A stretch of DNA of 64,000 bases, from positions 13,330,001 to 13,394,000 of the forward strand of contig OZ059899.1 of assembly GCA_964057225.1 (NCBI GenBank), read 5' to 3'. The stretch comes from Auanema rhodensis (taxonomy: Eukaryota > Animalia > Nematoda). Within the stretch, counting starts at the first letter, position 1, and every line of letters begins with the position of its first letter. Positions 12,842 to 64,000 of the stretch are shown here, piece by piece. Under the pieces are notes generated by a model. The model saw only the letters and a list, made by a program, of their open reading frames with translations. It searched no databases and was not told where the DNA came from. The position numbers were made by a program, and so were the translations under genes.

Positions 12842-12912
<71 letters not shown>
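12842..12912. repeat. (CT)n microsatellite
   Basis: Pure CT run of about 70 bp. Confidence 0.95.

Positions 12913-12915
<3 letters not shown>

Positions 12916-15684: not shown

Positions 15685-15735
<51 letters not shown>

Positions 15736-35625: not shown

Positions 35626-35629
<4 letters not shown>

Positions 35630-35691
<62 letters not shown>
35630..35691. repeat. (CT)n microsatellite
   Basis: Pure CT run. Confidence 0.95.
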
Positions 35692-35694
<3 letters not shown>

Positions 35695-36149: not shown

Positions 36150-36181
<32 letters not shown>

Positions 36182-36937
36182 TTCCTCATAACACTCAATA
36201 CTCAAGTATTTCTTCTAACAGAATAAAATACTATTACATGAGTTCTAATATCTTCAAGGGACCATTATATTGTTGAAAAACCTTGAATGTAATACTTAAT
36301 TCCTAATAAACTATACGATAAGACTAGATGTTATATGAGAAAATTCAATGATTTCATGTCTATTATATGAAAAACCCATACCATATACGTTTTTATTCTT
36401 TCATTTCATTTCTTATTCCGCTTAAAAAAACTTGTTTTAAGTCATTCTTTGTAAGGTAAGAAATAGAAATATTGAAATAATTTATATTAATTATATGTAT
36501 ATTATATAATTAATATTATATTTAAGATTTTATTTAATTTTTCTATTAATATAAACAATTAGCTAGTTATATTGTATTTCATATAATACTATATAGACTA
36601 AACTGTAAACGGAATTATGTTGCCAAAATATAGGAAATTTAATTCTTTTCTATCAGAAAAGTTGATGGGGCTATTCAACTAGTCCAGTTATACTTGAAAG
36701 ACGAATTTCTCTCTCTCTCTCTCTCCCTCTCTCTTTCTCTCTCTCCCTCTCTCTTTCTCTTTCTCTCTCTTGCTCTCTCTATTCGTGTAAGTTTTTCTCT
36801 TCTAATTTGACTTTAATTGATTCATCTGACTGATTGTTTTATCATTTTAGCAAAACGATAGCGTTTGGTCTTTTAGAAATTAGCATTGGATGACTGATCA
36901 CATAACACACAAAAATGAATTTGTCTCTCTCTCCCTT

Positions 36938-36979
<42 letters not shown>

Positions 36980-38337
36980 CTTAAAAAACGAATTGTTCGT
37001 TTATCATTAAAATTTTATATTTAGAGACATATTAGGGAGATAAAAAAAGATTTCTTATAGTTATGTCTCGTATGATAACTGTTTTCGTTCGTTTTTGTTT
37101 TCAAAGCAAAAACATCATTATACTGGTACATATCTATCAGTTTTTTTTTGTATTTTCCATAACGAACTAACTGATTACTACAAGTAGTTAGTAGTAGTAA
37201 GTAGTAGTAACAGATACACGTATGTATGTGTCTTCTGGAGTACATATAACACGTTGTTGTTACCATTCACCTCTTTCTTCATACTCTATACTCTTATTTC
37301 ATTTTTATTTCAATCATTGATCTCAAATAATTAATAGATAATAGAATTATTTTCGAGAAAAAAAAACTTTTTTTTTGTCTCTGAAATTCATTGATTTCAT
37401 TCATTTTTGCTCAAAAATTTTAAATTAAATTTTCATATGTATTATGAAGAATCTTAATATTCTCTGATGACAATAATCTTTTCAAAAGACATGCAGAGAT
37501 TCTAAGATTGAATATGATCAAAGAGATATAGAAAAGATAAATGAGAGGTATGGGGATGTAACAGCAGCAAAAGAAAAACGGATGAAGCTGATGGAAAGAC
37601 ATCGAAACACTAATATCAGCTGGGAGATAAATCCATAACCGTTTTGGCAACTAGCCAAATAATTTAAAAAGCTGATAAACCATTACTAATACGTCCTTTC
37701 ATTCGCTGTTTTTTGAATTCATATTCTGAAGACCTTAACAATAGCTACAAGAGAAATAAATTATTTGATAAGATAAACTCTCACTCTATCGATCCCTCCC
37801 CCCCCTCCAATCCCCCCCCCCCCCTCTCTCTCTATATCCCCCTCTCTCATCGCTTTTTCTTGCTGTTATTCAGTTTTTGCTCAACATCTTCATCTCATCC
37901 TATACATTCACTACATTAGTATTTTATTTGATAAGCATATATTGCTTGTTACTTGAGATTTAACTCAATTTTCCTTTTGGCAACTTTTTAAAGCTCAAGT
38001 TTTTCATCTCGCCGCCCTTCTCTTCTCATCATTGTGTCCTGAGAATCTGAAAAGTTTTATAAAAATCTACTTGACATCCAAGATCTTGTCTTGGTCTCCT
38101 TATATAGATCGGCGGTATTCACATGCGCTAACATGACAACTGTGAATTCGTGAAGAACATCTATTCTTCTATCTCCACCTACTATTACCATCTTCTATTT
38201 CTCTGAATATACATAAATACATCTCCCTCCTTCATACATTGCGTCCTTCTCTCTCAATCTCACTCCCTCTCTCTCTCTCTCTTTCCTGCCTGCCCTTCCT
38301 TGCCATCCGCCTGCTGCCTGGCACGTTGCCCTCAAGC

Positions 38338-38550
38338 ATGGCAACCAAGACTCGCAAATCTCAATCCATATCAGCTTGTTCATCAACCAGCACAGTTTAT
38401 GAAATACAAGCAGTTCAATCAACTGTTGCGGCTACAACGACAACAGAGTCTACAACAATTTCGACAGCAATGAGTCCCAAGTCATCGGAAGCGTCGTCCA
38501 GTTCGATGACTTCTAGCTCAACGTTAGTCGAAAGTAGAATTGTGCCTTCT
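38338..38550 (+). CDS. kin-1: Probable PKA-C alternative first exon (71 aa, Ser/Thr-rich, phase 0): MATKTRKSQSIS...VESRIVPS
   Basis: ATGGCA start, 213-nt open frame, GTGAGC donor at 38551, then a 233-nt intron to the acceptor at 38783, in frame. Confidence 0.6.
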
Positions 38551-38783
38551 GTGAGCTTTTCTTCTTATATCATCTAAGCTGTCAGCGTTATTGTATTCAT
38601 TTAATCTTTAAGTGAAATATGAAGTTTATTTTTTGATTGAATGACCATAAGTTTGAACTAATATTCAGATAGCAAATCAAAGAACATGCTTAAAATGCAA
38701 ATTTCAAGTTTTAAAAAAAGCAAAAATGTTTCAGCCTAATAGAAATGACCTGATCATCTTATATTATTATTATTTATTTTCAG

Positions 38784-38912
38784 AATACAGCGTCACTGGA
38801 TGACTTCGACCGTATCAAGACTCTGGGAACAGGGTCTTTCGGTAGGGTAATGCTAGTCAAGCATAAGCAGAGCGGAAACTACTACGCTATGAAGATTCTC
38901 GACAAGCAAAAG
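38784..38912 (+). CDS. kin-1: PKA-C core exon: [43 protein letters not shown]
   Basis: TTTTCAG acceptor, Gly-rich loop GTGSFG and catalytic Lys (AMK), AAG|GTCAGT donor. Confidence 0.98.
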
Positions 38913-38999
38913 GTCAGTTACATCAATATGATTTGGCTTATATTCAGTTAATACACATGCAATATGCTATTCTTCATCCACTTCATCTTTTGCTTTCAG

Positions 39000-39098
39000 G
39001 TAGTAAAGCTGAAGCAAGTTGAGCATACACTGAATGAAAAGCGAATTCTACAAGCCATTGACTTCCCCTTCCTTGTCAATATGCAGTATTCGTTTAAG
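39000..39098 (+). CDS. kin-1: PKA-C core exon: [33 protein letters not shown]
   Basis: TTTCAG/GT boundaries; alphaC helix (NEKRIL). Confidence 0.98.
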
Positions 39099-45994: not shown

Positions 45995-48900
45995 TGTAGG
46001 CACTGTGTGTCCGGTGAATGTCCATTTTTCATAAAAATCATCAACTAAAATCAAATACAGATGAACTGAGGTTGGGTATTCAGATGTGTAGATTCTGAAA
46101 TTTCAAGTGAGATTTGGATGTGACTCTCCAATTTTTCGGAAAAATGGTTTATATCGAACACATCCACAAGATTTGTTCACAAAAAAGTTCAGGCTGTAGG
46201 CACTGTGTGTCCGGTGAATGTCCATTTTTCATAAAAATCATCAACTAAAATCAAATACAGATGAACTGAGGTTGGGTATTCAGATGTGTAGATTCTGAAT
46301 TTTCAAGTGAGATTTGGATGTGACTCTCCAATTTTTCGGAAAAATGGTTTATATCGAACACATCCACAAGATTTGTTCACAAAAAAGTTCAGGCTGTAGG
46401 CACTGTGTGTCCGGTGAATGTCCATTTTTCACAAAAATCATCAACTAAAATCAAATACAGATGAGCTGAGGTTGGGTATTCAGATGTGTAGATTCTGAAT
46501 TTTCAAGTGAGATTTGGATGTGACTCTCCAATTTTTCGGAAAAATGGTTTATATCGAACACATCCACAAGATTTGTTCACAAAAAAGTTCAGGCTGTAGG
46601 CACTGTGTGTCCGGTGAATGTCCATTTTTCATAAAAATCATCAACTAAAATCAAATACAGATGAGCTGAGGTTGGGCATTCAGATGTGTAGATTCTGAAT
46701 TTTCAAGTGAGATTTGGATGTGACTCTCCAATTTTTCGGAAAAATGGTTTATATCGAACACATCCACAAGATTTGTTCACAAAAAAGTTCAGGCTGTAGG
46801 CACTGTGTGTCCGGTGAATGTCCATTTTTCACAAAAATCATCAACTAAAATCAAATACAGATGAGCTGAGGTTGGGTATTCAGATGTGTAGATTCTGAAA
46901 TTTTAAGTGAGATTTGGATGTGACTCTCCAATTTTTCGGAAAAATGGTTTATATCGAACACATCCACAAGATTTGTTCACAAAAAAGTTCAGGCTGTAGG
47001 CACTGTGTGTCCGGTGAATGTCCATTTTTCACAAAAATCATCAACTAAAATCAAATACAGATGAGCTGAGGTAGGGTATTCAGATGTGTAGATTCTGAAA
47101 TTTTAAGTGAGATTTGGATGTGACTCTCCAATTTTTCGGAAAAATGGTTTATATCGAACACATCCACAAGATTTGTTCACAAAAAAGTTCAGGCTGTAGG
47201 CACTGTGTGTCCGGTGAATGTCCATTTTTCACAAAAATCATCAACTAAAATCAAATACAGATGAGCTGAGGTTGGGCATTCAGATGTGTAGATTCTGAAT
47301 TTTCAAGTGAGATTTGGATGTGACTCTCCAATTTTTCGGAAAAATGGTTTATATCGAACACATCCACAAGATTTGTTCACAAAAAAGTTCAGGCTGTAGG
47401 CACTGTGTGTCCGGTGAATGTCCATTTTTCACAAAAATCATCAACTAAAATCAAATACAGATGAGCTGAGGTTGGGTATTCAGATGTGTAGATTCTGAAA
47501 TTTTAAGTGAGATTTGGATGTGACTCTCCAATTTTTCGGAAAAATGGTTTATATCGAACACATCCACAAGATTTGTTCACAAAAAAGTTCAGGCTGTAGG
47601 CACTGTGTGTCCGGTGAATGTCCATTTTTCATAAAAATCATCAACTAAAATCAAATACAGATGAACTGAGGTTGGGTATTCAGATGTGTAGATTCTGAAT
47701 TTTCAAGTGAGATTTGGATGTGACTCTCCAATTTTTCGGAAAAATGGTTTATATCGAACACATCCACAAGATTTGTTCACAAAAAAGTTCAGGCCGTAGG
47801 CACTGTGTGTCCGGTGAATGTCCATTTTTCACAAAAATCATCAACTAAAATCAAATACAGATGAACTGAGGTTGGGTATTCAGATGTGTAGATTCTGAAT
47901 TTTCAAGTGAGATTTGGATGTGACTCTCCAATTTTTCGGAAAAATGGTTTATATCGAACACATCCACAAGATTTGTTCACAAAAAAGTTCAGGCTGTAGG
48001 CACTGTGTGTCCGGTGAATGTCCATTTTTCATAAAAATCATCAACTAAAATCAAATACAGATGAGCTGAGGTTGGGCATTCAGATGTGTAGATTCTGAAT
48101 TTTCAAGTGAGATTTGGATGTGACTCTCCAATTTTTCGGAAAAATGGTTTATATCGAACACATCCACAAGATTTGTTCACAAAAAAGTTCAGGCTGTAGG
48201 CACTGTGTGTCCGGTGAATGTCCATTTTTCATAAAAATCATCAACTAAAATCAAATACAGATGAGCTGAGGTTGGGCATTCAGATGTGTAGATTCTGAAT
48301 TTTCAAGTGAGATTTGGATGTGACTCTCCAATTTTTCGGAAAAATGGTTTATATCGAACACATCCACAAGATTTGTTCACAAAAAAGTTCAGGCTGTAGG
48401 CACTGTGTGTCCGGTGAATGTCCATTTTTCACAAAAATCATCAACTAAAATCAAATACAGATGAACTGAGGTTGGGTATTCAGATGTGTAGATTCTGAAT
48501 TTTCAAGTGAGATTTGGATGTGACTCTCCAATTTTTCGGAAAAATGGTTTATATCGAACACATCCACAAGATTTGTTCACAAAAAAGTTCAGGCTGTAGG
48601 CACTGTGTGTCCGGTGAATGTCCATTTTTCATAAAAATCATCAACTAAAATCAAATACAGATGAGCTGAGGTTGGGCATTCAGATGTGTAGATTCTGAAT
48701 TTTCAAGTGAGATTTGGATGTGACTCTCCAATTTTTCGGAAAAATGGTTTATATCGAACACATCCACAAGATTTGTTCACAAAAAAGTTCAGGCTGTAGG
48801 CACTGTGTGTCCGGTGAATGTCCATTTTTCATAAAAATCATCAACTAAAATCAAATACAGATGAGCTGAGGTTGGGCATTCAGATGTGTAGATTCTGAAT

Positions 48901-51900
48901 TTTCAAGTGAGATTTGGATGTGACTCTCCAATTTTTCGGAAAAATGGTTTATATCGAACACATCCACAAGATTTGTTCACAAAAAAGTTCAGGCTGTAGG
49001 CACTGTGTGTCCGGTGAATGTCCATTTTTCATAAAAATCATCAACTAAAATCAAATACAGATGAACTGAGGTTGGGTATTCAGATGTGTAGATTCTGAAA
49101 TTTCAAGTGAGATTTGGATGTGACTCTCCAATTTTTCGGAAAAATGGTTTATATCGAACACATCCACAAGATTTGTTCACAAAAAAGTTCAGGCTGTAGG
49201 CACTGTGTGTCCGGTGAATGTCCATTTTTCACAAAAATCATCAACTAAAATCAAATACAGATGAGCTGAGGTTGGGCATTCAGATGTGTAGATTCTGAAT
49301 TTTCAAGTGAGATTTGGATGTGACTCTCCAATTTTTCGGAAAAATGGTTTATATCGAACACATCCACAAGATTTGTTCACAAAAAAGTTCAGGCTGTAGG
49401 CACTGTGTGTCCGGTGAATGTCCATTTTTCACAAAAATCATCAACTAAAATCAAATACAGATGAGCTGAGGTTGGGCATTCAGATGTGTAGATTCTGAAT
49501 TTTCAAGTGAGATTTGGATGTGACTCTCCAATTTTTCGGAAAAATGGTTTATATCGAACACATCCACAAGATTTGTTCACAAAAAAGTTCAGGCTGTAGG
49601 CACTGTGTGTCCGGTGAATGTCCATTTTTCACAAAAATCATCAACTAAAATCAAATACAGATGAACTGAGGTTGGGTATTCAGATGTGTAGATTCTGAAA
49701 TTTCAAGTGAGATTTGGATGTGACTCTCCAATTTTTCGGAAAAATGGTTTATATCGAACACATCCACAAGATTTGTTCACAAAAAAGTTCAGGCCGTAGG
49801 CACTGTGTGTCCGGTGAATGTCCATTTTTCATAAAAATCATCAACTAAAATCAAATACAGATGAGCTGAGGTTGGGCATTCAGATGTGTAGATTCTGAAT
49901 TTTCAAGTGAGATTTGGATGTGACTCTCCAATTTTTCGGAAAAATGGTTTATATCGAACACATCCACAAGATTTGTTCACAAAAAAGTTCAGGCTGTAGG
50001 CACTGTGTGTCCGGTGAATGTCCATTTTTCACAAAAATCATCAACTAAAATCAAATACAGATGAACTGAGGTTGGGTATTCAGATGTGTAGATTCTGAAA
50101 TTTCAAGTGAGATTTGGATGTGACTCTCCAATTTTTCGGAAAAATGGTTTATATCGAACACATCCACAAGATTTGTTCACAAAAAAGTTCAGGCCGTAGG
50201 CACTGTGTGTCCGGTGAATGTCCATTTTTCATAAAAATCATCAACTAAAATCAAATACAGATGAGCTGAGGTTGGGCATTCAGATGTGTAGATTCTGAAT
50301 TTTCAAGTGAGATTTGGATGTGACTCTCCAATTTTTCGGAAAAATGGTTTATATCGAACACATCCACAAGATTTGTTCACAAAAAAGTTCAGGCTGTAGG
50401 CACTGTGTGTCCGGTGAATGTCCATTTTTCACAAAAATCATCAACTAAAATCAAATACAGATGAGCTGAGGTTGGGCATTCAGATGTGTAGATTCTGAAT
50501 TTTCAAGTGAGATTTGGATGTGACTCTCCAATTTTTCGGAAAAATGGTTTATATCGAACACATCCACAAGATTTGTTCACAAAAAAGTTCAGGCTGTAGG
50601 CACTGTGTGTCCGGTGAATGTCCATTTTTCACAAAAATCATCAACTAAAATCAAATACAGATGAGCTGAGGTTGGGCATTCAGATGTGTAGATTCTGAAT
50701 TTTCAAGTGAGATTTGGATGTGACTCTCCAATTTTTCGGAAAAATGGTTTATATCGAACACATCCACAAGAGTTGTTCACAAAAAAGTTCAGGCTGTAGG
50801 CACTGTGTGTCCGGTGAATGTCCATTTTTCACAAAAATCATCAACTAAAATCAAATACAGATGAACTGAGGTTGGGTATTCAGATGTGTAGATTCTGAAT
50901 TTTCAAGTGAGATTTGGATGTGACTCTCCAATTTTTCGGAAAAATGGTTTATATCAAACACATCCACAAGATTTGTTCACAAAAAAGTTCAGGCTGTAGG
51001 CACTGTGTGTCCGGTGAATGTCCATTTTTCACAAAAATCATCAACTAAAATCAAATACAGATCAACTGAGGTTGGGTATTCAGATGTGTAGATTCTGAAA
51101 TTTCAAGTGAGATTTGGATGTGACTCTCCAATTTTTCGGAAAAATGGTTTATATCGAACACATCCACAAGATTTGTTCACAAAAAAGTTCAGGCTGTAGG
51201 CACTGTGTGTCCGGTGAATGTCCATTTTTCATAAAAATCATCAACTAAAATCAAATACAGATGAACTGAGGTTGAGTATTCAGATGTGTAGATTCTGAAA
51301 TTTCAAGTGAGATTTGGATGTGACTCTCCAATTTTTCGGAAAAATGGTTTATATCGAACACATCCACAAGATTTGTTCACAAAAAAGTTCAGGCTGTAGG
51401 CACTGTGTGTCCGGTGAATGTCCATTTTTCACAAAAATCATCAACTAAAATCAAATACAGATGAACTGAGGTTGGGTATTCAGATGTGTAGATTCTGAAT
51501 TTTCAAGTGAGATTTGGATGTGACTCTCCAATTTTTCGGAAAATGGTTTATATCGAACACATCCACAAGAGTTGTTCACAAAAAAGTTCAGGCTGTAGGC
51601 ACTGTGTGTCCGGTGAATGTCCATTTTTCACAAAAATCATCAACTAAAATCAAATACAGATGAACTGAGGTTGGGTATTCAGATGTGTAGATTCTGAATT
51701 TTCAAGTGAGATTTGGATGTGACTCTCCAATTTTTCGGAAAAATGGTTTATATCGAACACATCCACAAGAGTTGTTCACAAAAAAGTTCAGGCTGTAGGC
51801 ACTGTGTGTCCGGTGAATGTCCATTTTTCACAAAAATCATCAACTAAAATCAAATACAGATGAACTGAGGTTGGGTATTCAGATGTGTAGATTCTGAAAT

Positions 51901-54900
51901 TTCAAGTGAGATTTGGATGTGACTCTCCAATTTTTCGGAAAAATGGTTTATATCGAACACATCCACAAGATTTGTTCACAAAAAAGTTCAGGCCGTAGGC
52001 ACTGTGTGTCCGGTGAATGTCCATTTTTCACAAAAATCATCAACTAAAATCAAATACAGATGAACTGAGGTTGGGTATTCAGATGTGTAGATTCTGAAAT
52101 TTCAAGTGAGATTTGGATGTGACTCTCCAATTTTTCGGAAAAATGGTTTATATCGAACACATCCACAAGATTTGTTCACAAAAAAGTTCAGGCTGTAGGC
52201 ACTGTGTGTCCGGTGAATGTCCATTTTTCATAAAAATCATCAACTAAAATCAAATACAGATGAGCTGAGGTTGGGCATTCAGATGTGTAGATTCTGAATT
52301 TTCAAGTGAGATTTGGATGTGACTCTCCAATTTTTCGGAAAAATGGTTTATATCGAACACATCCACAAGATTTGTTCACAAAAAAGTTCAGGCTGTAGGC
52401 ACTGTGTGTCCGGTGAATGTCCATTTTTCACAAAAATCATCAACTAAAATCAAATACAGATGAACTGAGGTTGGGTATTCAGATGTGTAGATTCTGAAAT
52501 TTCAAGTGAGATTTGGATGTGACTCTCCAATTTTTCGGAAAAATGGTTTATATCGAACACATCCACAAGATTTGTTCACAAAAAAGTTCAGGCCGTAGGC
52601 ACTGTGTGTCCGGTGAATGTCCATTTTTCACAAAAATCATCAACTAAAATCAAATACAGATGAACTGAGGTTGGGTATTCAGATGTGTAGATTCTGAAAT
52701 TTCAAGTGAGATTTGGATGTGACTCTCCAATTTTTCGGAAAAATGGTTTATATCGAACACATCCACAAGATTTGTTCACAAAAAAGTTCAGGCCGTAGGC
52801 ACTGTGTGTCCGGTGAATGTCCATTTTTCACAAAAATCATCAACTAAAATCAAATACAGATGAACTGAGGTTGGGTATTCAGATGTGTAGATTCTGAAAT
52901 TTCAAGTGAGATTTGGATGTGACTCTCCAATTTTTCGGAAAAATGGTTTATATCGAACACATCCACAAGATTTGTTCACAAAAAAGTTCAGGCTGTAGGC
53001 ACTGTGTGTCCGGTGAATGTCCATTTTTCATAAAAATCATCAACTAAAATCAAATACAGATGAGCTGAGGTTGGGCATTCAGATGTGTAGATTCTGAATT
53101 TTCAAGTGAGATTTGGATGTGACTCTCCAATTTTTCGGAAAAATGGTTTATATCGAACACATCCACAAGATTTGTTCACAAAAAAGTTCAGGCCGTAGGC
53201 ACTGTGTGTCCGGTGAATGTCCATTTTTCACAAAAATCATCAACTAAAATCAAATACAGATGAACTGAGGTTGGGTATTCAGATGTGTAGATTCTGAAAT
53301 TTCAAGTGAGATTTGGATGTGACTCTCCAATTTTTCGGAAAAATGGTTTATATCGAACACATCCACAAGATTTGTTCACAAAAAAGTTCAGGCTGTAGGC
53401 ACTGTGTGTCCGGTGAATGTCCATTTTTCATAAAAATCATCAACTAAAATCAAATACAGATGAGCTGAGGTTGGGCATTCAGATGTGTAGATTCTGAATT
53501 TTCAAGTGAGATTTGGATGTGACTCTCCAATTTTTCGGAAAAATGGTTTATATCGAACACATCCACAAGATTTGTTCACAAAAAAGTTCAGGCTGTAGGC
53601 ACTGTGTGTCCGGTGAATGTCCATTTTTCATAAAAATCATGAACTAAAATCAAATACAGATGAACTGAGGTTGGGTATTCAGATGTGTAGATTCTGAAAT
53701 TTCAAGTGAGATTTGGATGTGACTCTCCAATTTTTCGGAAAAATGGTTTATATCGAACACATCCACAAGATTTGTTCACAAAAAAGTTCAGGCTGTAGGC
53801 ACTGTGTGTCCGGTGAATGTCCATTTTTCACAAAAATCATCAACTAAAATCAAATACAGATGAACTGAGGTTGGGTATTCAGATGTGTAGATTCTGAAAT
53901 TTCAAGTGAGATTTGGATGTGACTCTCCAATTTTTCGGAAAAATGGTTTATATCGAACACATCCACAAGATTTGTTCACAAAAAAGTTCAGGCTGTAGGC
54001 ACTGTGTGTCCGGTGAATGTCCATTTTTCACAAAAATCATCAACTAAAATCAAATACAGATGAACTGAGGTTGGGTATTCAGATGTGTAGATTCTGAAAT
54101 TTCAAGTGAGATTTGGATGTGACTCTCCAATTTTTCGGAAAAATGGTTTATATCGAACACATCCACAAGATTTGTTCACAAAAAAGTTCAGGCTGTAGGC
54201 ACTGTGTGTCCGGTGAATGTCCATTTTTCACAAAAATCATCAACTAAAATCAAATACAGATGAACTGAGGTTGGGTATTCAGATGTGTAGATTCTGAAAT
54301 TTCAAGTGAGATTTGGATGTGACTCTCCAATTTTTCGGAAAAATGGTTTATATCGAACACATCCACAAGATTTGTTCACAAAAAAGTTCAGGCTGTAGGC
54401 ACTGTGTGTCCGGTGAATGTCCATTTTTCACAAAAATCATCAACTAAAATCAAATACAGATGAACTGAGGTTGGGTATTCAGATGTGTAGATTCTGAAAT
54501 TTCAAGTGAGATTTGGATGTGACTCTCCAATTTTTCGGAAAAATGGTTTATATCGAACACATCCACAAGATTTGTTCACAAAAAAGTTCAGGCTGTAGGC
54601 ACTGTGTGTCCGGTGAATGTCCATTTTTCACAAAAATCATCAACTAAAATCAAATACAGATGAACTGAGGTTGGGTATTCAGATGTGTAGATTCTGAAAT
54701 TTCAAGTGAGATTTGGATGTGACTCTCCAATTTTTCGGAAAAATGGTTTATATCGAACACATCCACAAGATTTGTTCACAAAAAAGTTCAGGCTGTAGGC
54801 ACTGTGTGTCCGGTGAATGTCCATTTTTCACAAAAATCATCAACTAAAATCAAATACAGATGAACTGAGGTTGAGTATTCAGATGTGTAGATTCTGAAAT

Positions 54901-57900
54901 TTCAAGTGAGATTTGGATGTGACTCTCCAATTTTTCGGAAAAATGGTTTATATCGAACACATCCACAAGATTTGTTCACAAAAAAGTTCAGGCTGTAGGC
55001 ACTGTGTGTCCGGTGAATGTCCATTTTTCACAAAAATCATCAACTAAAATCAAATACAGATGAACTGAGGTTGGGTATTCAGATGTGTAGATTCTGAATT
55101 TTCAAGTGAGGTTTAGATGTGACTCTCCAATTTTTCGGAAAAATGGTTTATATCGAACACATCCACAAGATTTGTTCACAAAAAAGTTCAGGCTGTAGGC
55201 ACTGTGTGTCCGGTGAATGTCCATTTTTCACAAAAATCATCAACTAAAATCAAATACAGATGAACTGAGGTTGGGTATTCAGATGTGTAGATTCTGAAAT
55301 TTCAAGTGAGATTTGGATGTGACTCTCCAATTTTTCGGAAAAATGGTTTATATCGAACACATCCACAAGATTTGTTCACAAAAAAGTTCAGGCTGTAGGC
55401 ACTGTGTGTCCGGTGAATTTCCATTTTTCATAAAAATCATCAACTAAAATCAAATACAGATGAACTGAGGTTGGGTATTCAGATGTGTAGATTCTGAATT
55501 TTCAAGTGAGGTTTAGATGTGACTCTCCAATTTTTCGGAAAAATGGTTTATATCGAACACATCCACAAGATTTGTTCACAAAAAAGTTCAGGCTGTAGGC
55601 ACTGTGTGTCCGGTGAATGTCCATTTTTCACAAAAATCATCAACTAAAATCAAATACAGATGAACTGAGGTTGGGTATTCAGATGTGTAGATTCTGAAAT
55701 TTCAAGTGAGATTTGGATGTGACTCTCCAATTTTTCGGAAAAATGGTTTATATCGAACACATCCACAAGATTTGTTCACAAAAAAGTTCAGGCTGTAGGC
55801 ACTGTGTGTCCGGTGAATGTCCATTTTTCATAAAAATCATCAACTAAAATCAAATACAGATGAACTGAGGTTGGGTATTCAGATGTGTAGATTCTGAGTT
55901 TTCAAGTGAGATTTGGATGTGACTCTCCAATTTTTCGGAAAAATGGTTTATATCGAACACATCCACAAGATTTGTTCACAAAAAAGTTCAGGCTGTAGGC
56001 ACTGTGTGTCCGGTGAATGTCCATTTTTCATAAAAATCATCAACTAAAATCAAATACAGATGAACTGAGGTTGGGTATTCAGATGTGTAGATTCTGAGTT
56101 TTCAAGTGAGATTTGGATGTGACTCTCCAATTTTTCGGAAAAATGGTTTATATCGAACACATCCACAAGATTTGTTCACAAAAAAGTTCAGGCTGTAGGC
56201 ACTGTGTGTCCGGTGAATGTCCATTTTTCATAAAAATCATCAACTAAAATCAAATACAGATGAACTGAGGTTGGGTATTCAGATGTGTAGATTCTGAATT
56301 TTCAAGTGAGATTTGGATGTGACTCTCCAATTTTTCGGAAAAATGGTTTATATCGAACACATCCACAAGATTTGTTCACAAAAAAGTTCAGGCTGTAGGC
56401 ACTGTGTGTCCGGTGAATGTCCATTTTTCATAAAAATCATCAACTAAAATCAAATACAGATGAACTGAGGTTGGGTATTCAGATGTGTAGATTCTGAATT
56501 TTCAAGTGAGATTTGGATGTGACTCTCCAATTTTTCGGAAAAATGGTTTATATCGAACACATCCACAAGATTTGTTCACAAAAAAGTTCAGGCTGTAGGC
56601 ACTGTGTGTCCGGTGAATGTCCATTTTTCACAAAAATCATCAACTAAAATCAAATACAGATGAACTGAGGTTGGGTATTCAGATGTGTAGATTCTGAATT
56701 TTCAAGTGAGGTTTAGATGTGACTCTCCAATTTTTCGGAAAAATGGTTTATATCGAACACATCCACAAGATTTGTTCACAAAAAAGTTCAGGCTGTAGGC
56801 ACTGTGTGTCCGGTGAATGTCCATTTTTCACAAAAATCATCAACTAAAATCAAATACAGATGAACTGAGGTTGGGTATTCAGATGTGTAGATTCTGAAAT
56901 TTCAAGTGAGATTTGGATGTGACTCTCCAATTTTTCGGAAAAATGGTTTATATCGAACACATCCACAAGATTTGTTCACAAAAAAGTTCAGGCTGTAGGC
57001 ACTGTGTGTCCGGTGAATTTCCATTTTTCATAAAAATCATCAACTAAAATCAAATACAGATGAACTGAGGTTGGGTATTCAGATGTGTAGATTCTGAATT
57101 TTCAAGTGAGGTTTAGATGTGACTCTCCAATTTTTCGGAAAAATGGTTTATATCGAACACATCCACAAGATTTGTTCACAAAAAAGTTCAGGCTGTAGGC
57201 ACTGTGTGTCCGGTGAATGTCCATTTTTCACAAAAATCATCAACTAAAATCAAATACAGATGAACTGAGGTTGGGTATTCAGATGTGTAGATTCTGAAAT
57301 TTCAAGTGAGATTTGGATGTGACTCTCCAATTTTTCGGAAAAATGGTTTATATCGAACACATCCACAAGATTTGTTCACAAAAAAGTTCAGGCTGTAGGC
57401 ACTGTGTGTCCGGTGAATGTCCATTTTTCATAAAAATCATCAACTAAAATCAAATACAGATGAACTGAGGTTGGGTATTCAGATGTGTAGATTCTGAGTT
57501 TTCAAGTGAGATTTGGATGTGACTCTCCAATTTTTCGGAAAAATGGTTTATATCGAACACATCCACAAGATTTGTTCACAAAAAAGTTCAGGCTGTAGGC
57601 ACTGTGTGTCCGGTGAATGTCCATTTTTCATAAAAATCATCAACTAAAATCAAATACAGATGAACTGAGGTTGGGTATTCAGATGTGTAGATTCTGAGTT
57701 TTCAAGTGAGATTTGGATGTGACTCTCCAATTTTTCGGAAAAATGGTTTATATCGAACACATCCACAAGATTTGTTCACAAAAAAGTTCAGGCTGTAGGC
57801 ACTGTGTGTCCGGTGAATGTCCATTTTTCATAAAAATCATCAACTAAAATCAAATACAGATGAACTGAGGTTGGGTATTCAGATGTGTAGATTCTGAATT

Positions 57901-60900
57901 TTCAAGTGAGATTTGGATGTGACTCTCCAATTTTTCGGAAAAATGGTTTATATCGAACACATCCACAAGATTTGTTCACAAAAAAGTTCAGGCTGTAGGC
58001 ACTGTGTGTCCGGTGAATGTCCATTTTTCATAAAAATCATCAACTAAAATCAAATACAGATGAACTGAGGTTGGGTATTCAGATGTGTAGATTCTGAATT
58101 TTCAAGTGAGATTTGGATGTGACTCTCCAATTTTTCGGAAAAATGGTTTATATCGAACACATCCACAAGATTTGTTCACAAAAAAGTTCAGGCTGTAGGC
58201 ACTGTGTGTCCGGTGAATGTCCATTTTTCATAAAAATCATCAACTAAAATCAAATACAGATGAACTGAGGTTGGGTATTCAGATGTGTAGATTCTGAATT
58301 TTCAAGTGAGGTTTGGATGTGACTCTCCAATTTTTCGGAAAAATGGTTTATATCGAACACATCCACAAGATTTGTTCACAAAAAAGTTCAGGCTGCAGGC
58401 ACTGTGTGTCCGGTGAATGTCCATTTTTCACAAAAATCATCAACTAAAATCAAATACAGATGAACTGAGGTTGGGTATTCAGATGTGTAGATTCTGAAAT
58501 TTCAAGTGAGATTTGGATGTGACTCTCCAATTTTTCGGAAAAATGGTTTATATCGAACACATCCACAAGATTTGTTCACAAAAAAGTTCAGGCTGTAGGC
58601 ACTGTGTGTCCGGTGAATGTCCATTTTTCATAAAAATCATCAACTAAAATCAAATACAGATGAACTGAGGTTGGGTATTCAGATGTGTAGATTCTGAATT
58701 TTCAAGTGAGATTTGGATGTTACTCTCCAATTTTTCGGAAAAATGGTTTATATCGAACACATCCACAAGATTTGTTCACAAAAAAGTTCAGGCTGTAGGC
58801 ACTGTGTGTCCGGTGAATGTCCATTTTTCACAAAAATCATCAACTAAAATCAAATACAGATGAACTGAGGTTGGGTATTCAGATGTGTAGATTCTGAAAT
58901 TTCAAGTGAGATTTGGATGTGACTCTCCAATTTTTCGGAAAAATGGTTTATATCGAACACATCCACAAGATTTGTTCACAAAAAAGTTCAGGCTGTAGGC
59001 ACTGTGTGTCCGGTGAATGTCCATTTTTCATAAAAATCATCAACTAAAATCAAATACAGATGAACTGAGGTTGGGTATTCAGATGTGTAGATTCTGAAAT
59101 TTCAAGTGAGATTTGGATGTTACTCTCCAATTTTTCGGAAAAATGGTTTATATCGAACACATCCACAAGATTTGTTCACAAAAAAGTTCAGGCTGTAGGC
59201 ACTGTGTGTCCGGTGAATGTCCATTTTTCACAAAAATCATCAACTAAAATCAAATACAGATGAGCTGAGGTTGGGCATTCAGATGTGTAGATTCTGAAAT
59301 TTCAAGTAAGATTTGGATGTGACTCTCCAATTTTTCGGAAAAATGGTTTATATCGAACACATCCACAAGATTTGTTCACAAAAAAGTTCAGGCTGTAGGC
59401 ACTGTGTGTCCGGTGAATGTCCATTTTTCATAAAAATCATCAACTAAAATCAAATACAGATGAACTGAGGTTGGGTATTCAGATGTGTAGATTCTGAGTT
59501 TTCAAGTGAGATTTGGATGTGACTCTCCAATTTTTCGGAAAAATGGTTTATATCGAACACATCCACAAGATTTGTTCACAAAAAAGTTCAGGCTGTAGGC
59601 ACTGTGTGTCCGGTGAATGTCCATTTTTCATAAAAATCATCAACTAAAATCAAATACAGATGAACTGAGGTTGGGTATTCAGATGTGTAGATTCTGAAAT
59701 TTCAAGTGAGATTTGGATGTGACTCTCCAATTTTTCGGAAAAATGGTTTATATCGAACACATCCACAAGATTTGTTCACAAAAAAGTTCAGGCTGTAGGC
59801 ACTGTGTGTCCGGTGAATGTCCATTTTTCACAAAAATCATCAACTAAAATCAAATACAGATGATCTGAGGTTGGGTATTCAGATGTGTAGATTCTGAAAT
59901 TTCAAGTGAGATTTGGATGTTACTCTCCAATTTTTCGGAAAAATGGTTTATATCGAACACATCCACAAGATTTGTTCACAAAAAAGTTCAGGCTGTAGGC
60001 ACTGTGTCCGGTGAATGTCCATTTTTCATAAAAATCATCAACTAAAATCAAATACAGATGATCTGAGGTTGGGCATTCAGATGTGTAGATTCTGAAATTT
60101 CAAGTCAGATTTGGATGTGACTCTCCAATTTTTCGGAAAAATGGTTTATATCGAACACATCCACAAGATTTGTTCACAAAAAAGTTCAGGCTGCAGGCAC
60201 TGTGTGTCCGGTGAATGTCCATTTTTCACAAAAATCATCAACTAAAATCAAATACAGATAAACTGAGGTTGGGCATTCAGATGTGTAGATTCTGAAATTT
60301 CAAGTCAGATTTGGATGTGACTCTCCAATTTTTCGGAAAAATGGTTTATATCGAACACATCCACAAGATTTGTTCACAAAAAAGTTCAGGCTGCAGGCAC
60401 TGTGTGTCCGGTGAATGTCCATTTTTCACAAAAATCATCAACTAAAATCAAATACAGATAAACTGAGGTTGGGTATTCAGATGTGTAGATTCTGAATTTT
60501 CAAGAGAGATTTGGCTGTGACTCTCCAATTTTTCGGAAAAATGGTTTATATCGAACACATCCACAAGATTTGTTCACAAAAAAGTTCAGGCTGCAGGCAC
60601 TGTGTGTCCGGTGAATGTCCATTTTTCACAAAAATCATCAACTAAAATCAAATACAGATAAACTGAGGTTGGGCATTCAGATGTGTAGATTCTGAAATTT
60701 CAAGTCAGATTTGGATGTGACTCTCCAATTTTTCGGAAAAATGGTTTATATCGAACACATCCACAAGATTTGTTCACAAAAAAGTTCAGGCTGCAGGCAC
60801 TGTGTGTCCGGTGAATGTCCATTTTTCACAAAAATCATCAACTAAAATCAAATACAGATAAACTGAGGTTGGGTATTCAAATGTGTAGATTCTGAATTTT

Positions 60901-61363
60901 CAAGTGAGATTTGGCTGTGACTCTCCAATTTTTCGGAAAAATGGTTTATATCGAACACATCCACATGATTTGTTCACAAAAAAGTTCAGGCTGCAGGCAC
61001 TGTGTGTCCGGTGAATGTCCATTTTTCACAAAAATCATCAACTAAAATCAAATACAGATAAACTGAGGTTGGGTATTCAAATGTGTAGATTCTGAATTTT
61101 CAAGTGAGATTTGGCTGTGACTCTCCAATTTTTCGGAAAAATGGTTTATATCGAACACATCCACATGATTTGTTCACAAAAAAGTTCAGGCTGCAGGCAC
61201 TGTGTGTCCGGTGAATGTCCATTTTTCATAAAAATCATCAACTAAAATCAAATACAGATGAACTGAGGTTGGGTATTCAGATGTGTAGATTCTGAATTTT
61301 CAAGTGAGATTTGGCTGTGACTCTCCAATTTTTCGGAAAAATGGTTTATATCGAACACATCCA
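45995..61363. repeat. 200-bp tandem satellite, about 77 copies (76 complete plus about 172 bp)
   Basis: Exact 200-bp periodicity of TGTAGGCACTGTGTGTCCGGTGAATG...CACAAAAAAGTTCAGGC. Only a handful of recurrent SNPs, a 1-bp deletion near 51541 and a 2-bp deletion near 60005. Confidence 0.99.
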
Positions 61364-61562
61364 TGAGAATGTTCGTGAATGAAAAAATACGCAAATTTAA
61401 TTTTTTATGAAAAAATTTGAACAATTATAAAAATAAATGTTAAGACAGTTATACCCGAATACACAAATGTGAAAACCGTGATTAACAGGGCTATATACCC
61501 ATAGTTCAATACACTTAGCCATCACTGTAATGAATTTGTTTGAACTTTGAACTTCTTCCTGT

Positions 61563-63313
61563 TTAGAAGTTCAGTTTGTTTACATCAGCGAGCAAATCGT
61601 CCATTCCCAAAGCTGAAAGATAACTCATATATATGTTATAAACATTATTAATACTATGAGATTTAGGTTTTTGAGGCTCTTCGAGATCCATATCTGAATC
61701 CACATCACTGTTAAGCTCGCCATCATCCTCATCACTCTCTTCCGTCGCACTCAAAGTTCCCTCGTCATCACTGTAATGAATTTGTTTCATAATTAGTGGA
61801 AATAAATTGAAATCAACCTCTCATTGCCGAGAGAAATACCAGTACCCAAAACTTCGCTCACAAGATCTATGAAGGACGATCCAAAACAGTTATTAGTTAG
61901 GGATAATGATCTGAAGCAAAAAAGACATGCTCATTATTCGATAAAGAAACATACACATTGCTTTTGAATGTGCCCTTCCACAACGAAATTATATGCTCAG
62001 CATCTGCAGAACTTAATTCTCCTCCAGATAAATCTACCGACTAATAAACAGAACAAATGAGAAAAATAAATGTTAACTTTCAAAAAAACCTTCAATTTAA
62101 CATGATCCCCAGATGTTAGAGCAGATATAACATCGATGGCTCCCTTTCTACACAATGAATCTCCTAGGTCGAGAACTTCTAGAGCTAGAAGACCTTTTAC
62201 AGCCTTAAGAAATATCACATTAAGAGCACAATGGAAGGAAAAACATACTGCAGCAACAGCTTTAGCTCCAGTAGCGGTGCAAGTATTATCGTTGAAGTTA
62301 ATGACCCGGAGATTAGGATTATATTTCAATGATTCGGCCAATGCTGTTATGCCATCTGATCGTATTCCATTCTGATAGATGATTATCTCCTCCAAACTTC
62401 CAATTTTCTACAAAAAGAAAATAACACACTCAAGTCCAATAAGAAAAAACCTTGAAAGCTTTCGAAAGCGCTTTGGCTCCGGGGTCTTCTAGTCGGTTTC
62501 TGCCGGCAATAAAGGTTTTCAACTGGAAGCTACGTCCACTTCTTTTAGCGTTATCGTAGCATTCTTCTAAGCATGATGCTACAATCTGAAAATAGTAAAA
62601 AAATAGACACTTGTTTAATTCCTGAATAACTCAACCTTTCCACCGGCACCTAAACCGTTATTATTTAATTTTAAAACTTCGAGAGAAAAGGCAGAGCTCG
62701 ATTTTAAGAAATCGGAGATTCCTGAAAGAAATTCTGAATATTTAACAATTAGATTTTCTATATACCTTCAGCTCCAATCGGTCCGAAGGCATTATCTGAT
62801 AGATCCAACTCTACGATCTGGCAATTTGCTCGCATCATAGCTCCGCACATGGATTTCTGAAAGCACTATTCACTTCAAAACAACTAAGTTATAACCTACC
62901 AGAATAGGTGGGATCTCTGTTTTTAAACGGCCAGTAAACATATCGCTCCATAAACACCTCTAGAAAGATTTGAAGTATTTAAGAAATAATACCATATTAA
63001 TACAAATAACGAAAATAAAATTATGACATAGGTAAACAAACTTTAAGTTCAGGATGTTTCAATAAGGATTGCCCTATTCTTTCTCCTGCAGGAACACCAA
63101 CAGTATTTCCTCGAAGAATAAGGGTGTGCATAGTGGGTGCTTTATCAATGACAGAGCAAACAAGTTCAGCTGCATAGAATAAAAGTAAAATCTTCAAAAT
63201 GAGATCGTATTACCGTCTGAAGCCGTATTTAACTTGTATTGCTTATCAAGGAACGAAACAACTTCCTCCTGTTCGACGTTCAGTTTGTTTACACCAGCGA
63301 GCAAATCGTCCAT
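61563..63313 (-). CDS. ran-2: Ran GTPase-activating protein (LRR domain plus acidic tract), terminal complete unit; 405 aa if counted from the ATG at 63313
   Basis: Exons on the minus strand: 63313-63214, 63169-63042, 62959-62900, 62856-62766, 62721-62636, 62585-62451, 62407-62249, 62203-62090, 62040-61955, 61910-61818, 61770-61655, 61612-61563. All are GT-AG, phase-consistent, and total 1218 nt. RanGAP motifs include SFLDKQYKLNTASDA, LRGNTVG, WSDMFTGRLKTEIPP, LDLSDNAFGPIG, LKLNNNGLG, FIAGRNRLEDPGA, QNGI, NDNT and the acidic tract EESDEDDGE. Whether this is the orthologue or a paralogue of ran-2 is unresolved. Confidence 0.9.
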
Positions 63314-64000
63314 TCCCAAAGCTGAAAGATAACTCATATATATGTTATAAACATTATTAATACTATGAGATTTAGGTTTTTGAGGCTCTTCGAGATCCAT
63401 ATCTGAATCCACATCACTGTTAAGCTCGCCATCATCCTCATCACTCTCTTCCGTCGCACTCAAAGTTCCCTCGTCATCACTGTAATGAATTTGTTTCATA
63501 ATTAGTGGAAATAAATTGAAATCAACCTCTCATTGCCGAGAGAAATACCAGTACCCAAAACTTCGCTCACAAGATCTATGAAGGACGATCCAAAACAGTT
63601 ATTAGTTAGGGATAATGATCTGAAGCAAAAAAGACATGCTCATTATTCGATAAAGAAACATACACATTGCTTTTGAATGTGCCCTTCCACAACGAAATTA
63701 TATGCTCAGCATCTGCAGAACTTAATTCTCCTCCAGATAAATCTACCGACTAATAAACAGAACAAATGAGAAAAATAAATGTTAACTTTCAAAAAAACCT
63801 TCAATTTAACATGATCCCCAGATGTTAGAGCAGATATAACATCGATGGCTCCCTTTCTACACAATGAATCTCCTAGGTCGAGAACTTCTAGAGCTAGAAG
63901 ACCTTTTACAGCCTTAAGAAATATCACATTAAGAGCACAATGGAAGGAAGAACATACTGCAGCAACAGCTTTAGCTCCAGTAGCGGTGCAAGTATTATCG
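61569..64000. repeat. 1709-bp tandem segmental duplication (at least 1.4 copies visible)
   Basis: 61569-62291 matches 63278-64000. Only two differences were seen by eye: GAT/GGT (D/G) and one intronic A/G. Confidence 0.95.
63314..64000 (-). CDS. ran-2: RanGAP upstream tandem unit (3' part; runs off the window), fused in frame to the next unit
   Basis: Copy of 61605-62291 displaced by 1709 bp. Exons: >64000-63958, 63912-63799, 63749-63664, 63619-63527, 63479-63364, then junction exon 63321-63214. No stop codon before the next unit. Confidence 0.85.

What the first reader, a model, noticed from the sequence alone, without database searches (positions are those of the whole stretch)
61563..64000. 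Head-to-tail, in-frame concatemer of near-identical RanGAP units (poly-RanGAP)
Seen: 1709-bp units, with 2 differences in the 723 bp compared, introns included. The acidic tail of one unit runs without a stop into MDDLLAGVNKLNVEQEEVVSFLDKQYKLNTASDA, the start of the next LRR domain, whether or not the 42-nt intron at 63363-63322 is spliced. All splice sites, phases and Ran-contact motifs (DMFTGR, DNAFG, GRNRLE) are intact. The last unit lacks any C-terminal domain after the acidic tract. Known: RanGAP is normally a single LRR domain, and vertebrate and fly forms have a C-terminal pore-targeting (SUMO) domain. I recall that C. elegans RAN-2 has a long form with two diverged RanGAP regions (needs verifying). 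Inference: a very recent or concertedly evolving multi-domain RanGAP, so domain multiplication may be recurrent in nematodes.
Basis: partly seen in the sequence, partly recalled or inferred. Interest (0 to 1): 0.8.

Follow-up and report, generated by a model that had tools for sequence, protein, structure and literature searches.

The report
In-frame tandem RanGAP gene array
This nematode gene for the enzyme that switches off the Ran GTPase is made of nearly identical whole-enzyme units joined head to tail in one reading frame, and because multi-unit RanGAPs turn out to be normal in nematodes, it is a fresh, extreme example of a little-described pattern and not a one-off oddity.

Summary
On the minus strand, a 1709-bp genomic unit repeats with 2 differences in 723 bp. 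Each unit has 11 exons, all introns are GT-AG, and it splices to 1176 nt (392 codons). Each unit encodes a complete RanGAP module: an LRR domain with the FTGR, DNAFG and GRNRLE motifs, then an acidic tract. The frame runs from one unit into the next whether or not the 42-nt junction intron is spliced.

The gene ends at 61563 in a decayed extra "head" (…LGMDDLLADVNKLNF*). No C-terminal domain lies anywhere in the 61.5 kb downstream.

What I added:
- "MDDLL…VVSFLDKQ" is the conserved internal linker of nematode RAN-2, not a protein start.
- The chromadorean RAN-2 proteins I examined have two RanGAP units (filarial ones only a degenerate second unit).
- Near-identical 2-4-unit forms without a C-terminal domain already sit unremarked in GenBank (Steinernema hermaphroditum, Mesorhabditis belari, cyst nematodes).
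- Units cluster by species, which is the mark of concerted evolution.

So this is a new, very young or strongly homogenised member of an existing but apparently undescribed kind.

The same stretch was also noted by this scan in an overlapping window.

The parts
63364..64000 (-). 3' part of the upstream RanGAP unit, cut by the window edge. It holds exon 7 (partial, 64000-63958), exon 8 (63912-63799), exon 9 (63749-63664), exon 10 (63619-63527) and exon 11 with the acidic tract (63479-63364).
   Evidence: It matches the next unit at offset 1709 with a single difference, at 63950 in intron 7.
63322..63363 (-). Unit-to-unit junction intron: 42 nt, GT..AG, phase 1, in frame and free of stops.
   Evidence: The ORF 63194-63499 reads through it.
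61655..63321 (-). One complete RanGAP unit of 11 exons and 392 codons: linker (MDDLLAGVNKLNV..VVSFLDKQ), LRR domain with FTGR, DNAFG and GRNRLE, then an acidic tract.
   Evidence: Exon model with all introns GT-AG. Exon-by-exon matches to human RanGAP1 and S. pombe Rna1p. 62% identity to the first unit of strongylid RAN-2 proteins.
61613..61654 (-). Second copy of the 42-nt junction intron.
   Evidence: Identical to 63322-63363.
61563..61612 (-). Terminal exon: a decayed head of a further unit encoding (T)LGMDDLLADVNKLNF, with stop TAA at 61565-61563.
   Evidence: Alignment to the full head shows substitutions and a 1-nt insertion that create the stop. Homology fades by about 61545.
61520..61541 (-). 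22-nt exact relic of the 3' end of intron 10 plus the start of exon 11.
   Evidence: blastn gives 100% over 22 nt, E 5e-5. The local alignment score is 44, against a maximum of 35 in 200 shuffles.
61364..61562 (-). Unique AT-rich 3' flank, the presumed 3' UTR, between the stop and the satellite. It has no canonical AATAAA.
45995..61363 (.). Context only: a 200-bp satellite with 76.9 copies and 98% matches, abutting the 3' end of the gene.
   Evidence: It has no similarity to the RanGAP unit.

Best explanation
What it is. This is the 3' end of one gene. Its product is a chain of complete RanGAP modules, and the structure of the repeat keeps the chain in frame. Each 1709-bp genomic unit splices to exactly 392 codons. 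It encodes a conserved hydrophobic linker, a full RanGAP LRR crescent with the Ran-contacting FTGR, DNAFG and GRNRLE loops, and an acidic tract.

How it arose and is maintained. Because units are identical down to their introns, unequal crossing-over or gene conversion between them adds, removes and homogenises copies without breaking the frame. The array edge has decayed. The last junction leads into a broken extra head, where substitutions and a 1-nt insertion created the present stop codon.

Ancestry. Ancestrally, nematode RAN-2 already had two such units plus a C-terminal helical domain. Here the units are homogenised (99.7% at the DNA level) and the C-terminal domain is gone from this gene. 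The same holds for the multi-unit RanGAPs of Steinernema hermaphroditum, Mesorhabditis belari and cyst nematodes.

Inferred function. It would be a soluble cytoplasmic activator of Ran-GTP hydrolysis with several catalytic sites per molecule. Each site is followed by an export-signal-like linker, and the protein is not anchored through a C-terminal domain.

Shown versus inferred. Shown: the anatomy, the frame, RanGAP identity, linker homology, and the comparative pattern. Inferred: that the array is real in reads, that it is transcribed as one mRNA, the unit count (probably three), and the biochemical consequence.
For: - The 1709-bp period with 2 differences in 723 bp, both substitutions.
- 11 exons per unit, all introns GT-AG, spliced length 1176 nt = 392 codons. 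The junction intron is 42 nt and stop-free.
- Exons 3, 4, 6 and 7 are colinear with human RanGAP1 residues 85-261. Exon 3 aligns to the S. pombe Rna1p stretch FSDIFTGRVKDEIP, which holds the FTGR arginine.
- The unit is 62% identical to the first unit of strongylid RAN-2 and 56% to the second.
- The head MDDLLAGVNKLNV..VVSFLDKQYKLNTA aligns to the internal linker before the second unit of strongylid RAN-2 (xDLLxxxGxxKF..VVSFLxxQLKLNTAEDAE). In those proteins it is certainly internal.
- Two-unit RAN-2 proteins occur in C. elegans, C. briggsae, Haemonchus, Nippostrongylus, Ancylostoma, Ascaris, Toxocara, Pristionchus and Globodera.
- In-frame, near-identical multi-unit genes occur elsewhere. S. 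hermaphroditum has 3 units that are 92-95.5% identical at the DNA level. M. belari has 4 units that are 88-95% identical. Both stop right after the acidic tract.
- Units cluster by species in Mesorhabditis, Steinernema, Globodera/Heterodera and ascarids.
- A C-terminal-domain profile detects Ascaris, Toxocara, Pristionchus, Brugia and Steinernema carpocapsae controls at E 1e-19 to 1e-8. It finds nothing in the six-frame translation of the window, of L001 or of L002.
Against: - The array rests on the assembly alone.
- Only 1.43 units lie in the window.
- There is no transcript evidence that the junction is crossed or spliced.
- No protein of this species is in the searched collections. I could not see the gene's 5' end, nor whether a canonical ran-2 with a C-terminal domain exists elsewhere in the genome.
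- At 99.7% identity, the intactness of the second copy says nothing about selection on it.
- The tree cannot decide whether the unit is of the first-unit or second-unit type (AU p = 0.37).
Confidence: 0.72

Rival explanations
1. Assembly artefact. The genome holds one unit (or a diverged two-unit gene), and the assembler expanded it into near-identical tandem copies.
For: The copies are 99.7% identical, and no reads could be checked.
Against: - The two differences are substitutions, one in an intron and one in the head, as expected of true paralogous copies.
- Even the last unit is followed by a decayed head and a 22-nt relic of a further unit, so a tandem duplication existed at this locus in any case.
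- The neighbouring 77-copy satellite is resolved with variants, which points to long accurate reads. If the genome is the HiFi assembly of Auanema rhodense, as earlier notes suggest (preprint 10.64898/2026.08.27.747507), a 5-kb array lies well within the usual length of HiFi reads.
- In-frame multi-unit RanGAP genes are found in independent assemblies of other nematodes.
Confidence: 0.08
2. Separate genes. Each unit is its own single-domain RanGAP gene, like yeast Rna1p. It would be trans-spliced at the TTTCAG acceptor 8 nt before the ATG of MDDLL, and the upstream RNA would be cleaved in the 42-nt spacer.
For: There is a good nematode acceptor (GTTATCTTTCAG) just before an ATG. An AATAAT lies inside the 42-nt stretch. 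LRR plus acidic tract is a complete RanGAP in fungi (1yrg and 1k5d matches).
Against: - No upstream unit has a stop codon in frame, spliced or not. Separate mRNAs would therefore be non-stop.
- The 42-nt stretch has a proper GT donor and the size of this gene's other introns.
- MDDLL... is homologous to the internal linker of two-unit RAN-2 proteins.
- Relatives are annotated as single multi-unit proteins. C. elegans RAN-2 is a curated two-unit protein, and Ascaris F1KT89 is, to my recollection and not checked here, derived from cDNA.
Confidence: 0.07
3. Segregation-Distorter-like element. An amplified, C-terminally short RanGAP next to a young satellite would act as a meiotic driver, or its suppressor, by disturbing the Ran gradient in gametogenesis.
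For: - The gene lacks the C-terminal domain and abuts a 15-kb 200-bp satellite.
- In Drosophila, a truncated tandem duplicate of RanGAP lacking 234 C-terminal residues drives against the Rsp satellite, and overexpressed wild-type RanGAP also drives (PMC7214746).
- If the genome is Auanema, that genus shows extreme X-chromosome drive (preprint).
Against: - Multi-unit RanGAPs without a C-terminal domain occur in Steinernema hermaphroditum, Mesorhabditis belari and cyst nematodes. No satellite flanks the two of these loci that I could inspect.
- Each unit, and the very C-terminus, keeps the export-signal-like linker motif, whereas Sd-RanGAP has lost its export signal.
- In Segregation Distorter the target satellite acts in trans on the homologous chromosome, not beside the gene.
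- There is no expression or genetic data.
Confidence: 0.05

Closest known systems
Canonical nematode RAN-2, for example C. elegans RAN-2 isoform b (926 aa), Ascaris suum F1KT89 and Haemonchus contortus V3C99_000348
   Same: It has two complete RanGAP LRR-plus-acidic units in one polypeptide. In clade V they are joined by the same hydrophobic linker (xDLLxxxGxxKF..VSFLDxQ), and the Ran-contact motifs are the same.
   Different: There the units are old and diverged (42-73% identity) and are followed by a helical C-terminal domain of about 150 residues. Here the units are 99.7% identical in DNA, that domain is absent, and the gene stops in a decayed further head.
Homogenised multi-unit RanGAPs in GenBank, all annotated as hypothetical or unnamed: Steinernema hermaphroditum KAK0418355.1 (3 units), Mesorhabditis belari CAJ0955496.1 (4 units), and Globodera/Heterodera (2 units)
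   Same: The units are in frame, head to tail and near-identical (84-98% protein identity). The tandem repeat is visible at the DNA level, introns included. The protein ends right after the last acidic tract with no C-terminal domain.
   Different: Their units are 88-95.5% identical in DNA with periods of about 1.45-1.6 kb. Here the identity is 99.7% with a 1709-bp period. This array also has a decayed terminal head and a flanking satellite.
Drosophila Sd-RanGAP (Segregation Distorter)
   Same: It also arose by tandem duplication at the RanGAP locus, giving a product without the C-terminal domain (PMC7214746).
   Different: Sd is a separate truncated copy beside an intact parent gene, not an in-frame chain. 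It has lost its export signal, and its satellite target lies on the homologous chromosome. No drive has been shown here.
S. pombe Rna1p (1yrg, 1k5d)
   Same: A single unit here has the Rna1p layout: an LRR crescent with the FTGR arginine loop, an acidic tract, and no SUMO-target domain.
   Different: Rna1p is a single module. Here the module is repeated within one reading frame.
Polyubiquitin genes (from general knowledge, not tested here)
   Same: They are also head-to-tail, in-frame concatemers of a whole functional unit, kept alike by concerted evolution and varying in copy number.
   Different: Polyubiquitin is cleaved into monomers. No processing site is evident in the RanGAP linker, and two-unit RAN-2 is treated as one protein in C. 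elegans.

Membership tests
RanGAP (Rna1p/RanGAP1) catalytic LRR domain | An LRR domain colinear with solved RanGAP structures | tested here: met
   Exons 3, 4, 6 and 7 match human RanGAP1 9b62_G residues 85-104, 110-133, 165-209 and 211-261, with E from 1.2e-5 to 1.9e-17. Exon 7 also matches Rna1p 190-236.
RanGAP (Rna1p/RanGAP1) catalytic LRR domain | The conserved Ran-contacting loops: the FTGR arginine (Rna1p Arg74 by my recollection of the literature), DNAFG and GRNRLE | tested here: met
   WSDMFTGRLKTEIPPIL aligns to Rna1p FSDIFTGRVKDEIP and to RanGAP1 WSDMFTGRLRTEIPP. LDLSDNAFGPIGAE and AGRNRLEDPGA are present. Catalysis itself was not assayed.
RanGAP (Rna1p/RanGAP1) catalytic LRR domain | An acidic tract after the LRR domain | tested here: met
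   Exon 11 encodes DDEGTLSATEESDEDDGELNSDVDSDMDLEE.
Metazoan RanGAP1 with a pore-targeting C-terminal domain | A C-terminal helical (SUMO-target) domain after the acidic tract | tested here: not met
   A profile of the clade-V nematode C-terminal domain finds controls at E 1e-19 to 1e-8 but nothing in the window (best E about 5). tblastn is also blank. The nematode domain itself is not recognised by Pfam PF07834 at E 0.1 or below, although a gecko control scores 1e-81.
Canonical two-unit nematode RAN-2 | Two or more RanGAP units in one frame, joined by the conserved linker | tested here: met
   The frame is continuous across the junction. The linker aligns to the strongylid inter-unit linker.
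Canonical two-unit nematode RAN-2 | Distinct, diverged first and second units, each orthologous to those of other clade-V species | tested here: not met
   The visible units are 99.7% identical. Placement with the first-unit or second-unit lineage is unresolved (AU p = 0.37).
Homogenised poly-RanGAP without a C-terminal domain (S. hermaphroditum, M. belari, cyst nematodes) | Near-identical in-frame units, with the gene ending just after the last acidic tract | tested here: met
   Here 19 further residues (a linker remnant) follow the tract.
Sd-RanGAP-type meiotic driver | A truncated copy beside an intact parent gene, mislocalised to the nucleus, distorting transmission against a sensitive satellite allele | not testable with these tools
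   Only the anatomy could be compared: no parent copy lies in the window, and an export-signal-like motif is retained. Localisation and transmission need experiments.

The most novel reading that the evidence does not exclude
The amplified RanGAP without a C-terminal domain is not just a housekeeping variant. It would be part of a germline conflict system, either a Segregation-Distorter-like driver or a dosage-based suppressor. That system would be tied to the neighbouring satellite and to the non-Mendelian chromosome behaviour of this (probably Auanema) lineage. Copy number would be kept labile by the frame-preserving repeat.
Probability: 0.05. Interest if true: 0.85.

Novelty: new member of a known kind. 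Interest (0 to 1): 0.45.

Why it matters
RanGAP is normally treated as a single-domain, single-copy housekeeping enzyme. This locus, set beside its relatives, shows a different picture in nematodes. There the whole catalytic module is a repeatable cassette. I found one to four copies per polypeptide. Copies are repeatedly homogenised, and homogenisation goes together with loss of the C-terminal domain.

I found no paper describing this, although the proteins are in public databases. It gives a natural series for asking what extra GAP sites per molecule, and the loss of pore anchoring, do to the Ran gradient in mitosis and meiosis. It is also a clean case of a protein repeat whose copy number can change without breaking the frame.

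It is not a new kind of system, and the drive reading is only a remote possibility.

Tried and rejected
Depth, long-read support and junction-spanning RNA remain untested.

2. Reading beyond 64000.
- An exact look-up of the 101-aa junction ORF found no record.
- A word search with it found nothing.
- Neither the 1.84-billion-protein search nor two further word searches returned any protein of this species. The last one used an alignment that carried this window's own exons by reference.
- The gene's 5' end and any second ran-2 stayed out of reach.

3. The spliced, joined model was never typed into or sent to any search, fold or look-up tool. Public searches used single exons by reference, or the stop-free stretch window:62090-62395:- (exon 7, in-frame intron 7, exon 8). 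The joined model was used only inside local scripts: the frame check, BLAST against proteins already fetched, and trees. No structure prediction was made for that reason.

4. The top of the big search was swamped by unrelated many-LRR proteins with 12-27 matched stretches. True RanGAPs had to be picked out by motif.

5. MAFFT misplaced four short exons in alignment A1. They were dropped for A2.

6. Assigning the unit to the first-unit or second-unit lineage of RAN-2 failed. The tree is a polytomy and the AU test gives p = 0.37.

7. A relation between the satellite and the RanGAP unit: none found.

8. Exon mapping of the M. belari and S. hermaphroditum genes by tblastn was too patchy to compare intron positions.

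9. The Auanema rhodense elimination preprint mentions no RanGAP.

Full report
**1. What is in the sequence**

The region 61563-64000 carries a minus-strand gene. Self-comparison gives a single outstanding period of 1709 bp. Over the 723 bp from 61569-62291 against 63278-64000 there are two differences. One is 61585 A versus 63294 G. The other is 62241 A versus 63950 G, in intron 7. Both are substitutions (blastn 99.45% over 729 bp).

I rebuilt the exon model in a local script. One period holds 11 exons:
- 63321-63214
- 63169-63042
- 62959-62900
- 62856-62766
- 62721-62636
- 62585-62451
- 62407-62249
- 62203-62090
- 62040-61955
- 61910-61818
- 61770-61655

Every intron is GT-AG. Intron sizes are 43-50 nt, with one of 82 nt. 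The spliced unit is 1176 nt, or 392 codons, with no stop.

The junction between units is a 42-nt GT..AG intron at 63363-63322, repeated at 61654-61613. It is itself in frame and free of stops, so the frame is kept whether it is spliced (…KSH-T-LGMDDLL…) or retained.

**2. It is RanGAP**

Searched exon by exon against solved structures, the exons match human RanGAP1 (9b62_G) in order:

| Exon | RanGAP1 residues | E-value |
|---|---|---|
| 3 | 85-104 | 2.6e-6 |
| 4 | 110-133 | 1.2e-5 |
| 6 | 165-209 | 2.2e-8 |
| 7 | 211-261 | 1.9e-17 |

Exon 3 also aligns to the S. pombe Rna1p stretch FSDIFTGRVKDEIP, which contains the conserved arginine loop. Pfam sees only weak LRR_6 hits on single exons, as expected for such short pieces. 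The unit is 62% identical to the first unit of strongylid RAN-2 proteins and 56% to the second.

**3. The 3' end**

After the last acidic tract the gene passes through a second copy of the junction intron into a decayed further head, LGMDDLLADVNKLNF. Substitutions and a 1-nt insertion relative to the intact head create the stop at 61565-61563, and homology fades by about 61545.

About 20 nt further on lies an exact 22-nt relic of the boundary between intron 10 and exon 11, at 61520-61541. This is what the worn edge of a tandem array looks like. It also means a tandem duplication existed here regardless of how many intact copies the assembly shows.

About 200 bp of unique AT-rich sequence follows, then a 200-bp satellite of 77 copies at 45995-61363.

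No RanGAP C-terminal domain exists in the 61.5 kb downstream. tblastn with eight nematode C-termini is blank. A profile built from twelve clade-V C-terminal domains finds Ascaris, Toxocara, Pristionchus, Brugia and Steinernema carpocapsae controls at E 1e-19 to 1e-8. In the six-frame translation of the window it finds only noise.

**4. Relatives change the picture**

No protein of this species is in the collections. The searches nevertheless returned the nematode RanGAP family.

C. elegans RAN-2 isoform b (926 aa) has two complete RanGAP units, with FTGR at residues 70 and 476, DLSDNA at 102 and 508, and RNRL at 172 and 580, followed by a C-terminal helical domain. The same is true of C. briggsae, C. 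angaria, Haemonchus, Nippostrongylus, Ancylostoma, Trichostrongylus, Ascaris, Toxocara and Pristionchus pacificus (P. fissidentatus has two units, but the listed model lacks most of the C-terminal part). Filarial proteins keep a degenerate second unit.

Identity between units within a species ranges widely:

| Species or group | Unit-to-unit protein identity |
|---|---|
| C. elegans | 42% |
| Strongylids | 58-61% |
| Ascarids | 71-73% |
| Mesorhabditis spiculigera | 84% |
| M. belari (four units) | 87-95% |
| Steinernema hermaphroditum (three units) | 97-98% |
| Globodera and Heterodera | 97-98% |

**5. The multi-unit genes of other species are real tandem DNA repeats**

The S. hermaphroditum locus (L002) has three units at a period of about 1446 bp and 92-95.5% DNA identity. 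The M. belari locus (L001) has four units at 88-95%. Both genes stop immediately after the last acidic tract, and neither has a C-terminal domain within 10 kb.

In the fetched set, diverged units (42-73%) nearly always come with the C-terminal domain. The one exception is the short P. fissidentatus model. Homogenised units (84-98%) never have the domain, although the two Mesorhabditis entries are flagged partial. The window's gene belongs to the second group.

**6. Concerted evolution**

In a maximum-likelihood tree of 46 units, units group by species or genus:
- M. belari's four units, at 100/100 support.
- M. spiculigera's two units, at 100/99.
- S. hermaphroditum's three units, at 99/97.
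- The two units of Globodera rostochiensis (100/97) and of Heterodera trifolii (98/83), although the two-unit layout is shared by both genera.

In Caenorhabditis and strongylids, by contrast, first and second units form separate orthologous lineages. That is the signature of repeated homogenisation or re-duplication.

The window's unit falls outside the well-supported second-unit clade, in a polytomy with first-unit lineages. An AU test cannot reject the alternative (p = 0.37). Its body is slightly closer to first units, while its head is of the second-unit or linker type. Both fit a homogenised hybrid.

**7. The linker**

MDDLLAGVNKLNVEQEEVVSFLDKQYKLNTASDAE aligns to the internal linker before the second unit of strongylid RAN-2. 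An example is Ancylostoma VDELLKGVGCMKF…VVSFLDRQLKLNTAEDAE. First units in those species begin directly at M-LSFLD. The methionine of MDDLL is therefore a linker residue, not a start codon. This is the strongest sequence argument for one long protein over separate genes.

In 13 of 14 clade-V linkers this segment carries a hydrophobic pattern, Φx3Φx2ΦxΦ, at the same place. In the window it reads LLAGVNKLNV, and the terminal remnant keeps it as LLADVNKLNF followed by the stop. The pattern occurs in 31% of random 65-residue windows of these proteins, so only the positional conservation carries weight. That it acts as a nuclear export signal is my inference and is untested.

**8. Mechanism, and what is shown versus inferred**

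- Shown: the repeat, the frame, RanGAP identity, linker homology, absence of the C-terminal domain, and the comparative pattern.
- Inferred: unequal crossing-over or gene conversion between 1709-bp units keeps them identical. Because a unit splices to a whole number of codons, copy number can change without breaking the frame.
- Inferred: the product is a soluble chain of RanGAP modules with several catalytic sites.
- Inferred: the count is about three units.

**9. Rivals**

- Assembly artefact (0.08). It is disfavoured by the substitution-type differences, by the decayed relics at the array edge, and by the resolved neighbouring satellite. Earlier notes (s1-373165, s1-391223) tie the genome to Auanema rhodense. 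That species has a PacBio HiFi assembly (preprint 10.64898/2026.08.27.747507), and a 5-kb array is well within the usual length of such reads. I did not verify the species myself.
- Separate trans-spliced genes (0.07). A good acceptor sits 8 nt before the ATG, and an AATAAT lies in the 42-nt stretch. But the upstream units would have no stop codon, and the linker homology argues against this reading.
- Segregation-Distorter-like driver (0.05). The parallel with Sd-RanGAP is real at the level of anatomy (PMC7214746). However, RanGAPs of this type exist in several nematodes, and neither of the two relatives' loci I inspected has a flanking satellite. The export-like motif is retained, and nothing functional is known.

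**10. Limits**

No read depth, long-read or RNA evidence could be obtained, and read laying was not used.
- The joined spliced model was used only inside local scripts. It was never sent to a search, fold or look-up tool.
- No structure was predicted.
- A literature search found no description of tandem RanGAP domains in nematodes. It covers only open-access papers and preprints, so I cannot say the pattern is unpublished.

**11. Verdict**

This is a young or strongly homogenised member of a nematode-wide family of multi-unit RanGAPs, and that family is already present in databases. The finding is moderately interesting as comparative cell biology and is not a new kind of system.

Noticed in passing
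window 61520-61541: An exact 22-nt copy of the 3' end of intron 10 plus the first 5 nt of exon 11 sits just past the gene's stop. It is apparently the relic of a further, internally deleted unit at the array edge.
   Followed up: partly
window 45995-61363: A 200-bp satellite with 76.9 copies and 98% matches ends about 200 bp from the RanGAP stop. Its register shifts by a 2-bp deletion variant near 59990, and later copies form a sub-family. It has no similarity to the RanGAP unit.
   Followed up: partly
L001 10001-17771 (Mesorhabditis belari) and L002 10001-14271 (Steinernema hermaphroditum): Both genes are in-frame tandem arrays of RanGAP units: 4 units at 88-95% DNA identity and 3 units at 92-95.5%. 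Both stop right after an acidic tract, with no C-terminal domain within 10 kb and no flanking satellite. They are annotated only as an unnamed and a hypothetical protein.
   Followed up: yes
proteins P0175, P0177, P0176 (Globodera rostochiensis, G. pallida, Heterodera trifolii): Cyst-nematode RanGAPs have two units that are 97-98% identical within each species yet cluster by species. This is a textbook signature of concerted evolution inside one polypeptide.
   Followed up: partly
proteins P0189 (ostracod Darwinula stevensoni, 886 aa) and P0107 (unknown eukaryote from a Logan contig, 952 aa): Two-unit RanGAPs also occur outside nematodes, with 56% and 62% identity between units. Duplication of the module is therefore not confined to one phylum.
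   Followed up: no
proteins P0174, P0159, P0028, P0196 (C-terminal 160-190 residues): The C-terminal helical domain of nematode RAN-2 proteins is not recognised by Pfam RanGAP1_C (PF07834) at E 0.1 or below, while a gecko control scores 1e-81. It is nevertheless conserved among nematodes, with profile E values of 1e-19 to 1e-8.
   Followed up: partly
window 11000-18000 and 34000-39000: Long CT/GA-type and other low-complexity runs give spurious ORFs rich in SLSLSL, ERERER and poly-T/A stretches. A 394-aa Ser-rich ORF lies at 29912-31096 on the plus strand.
   Followed up: no
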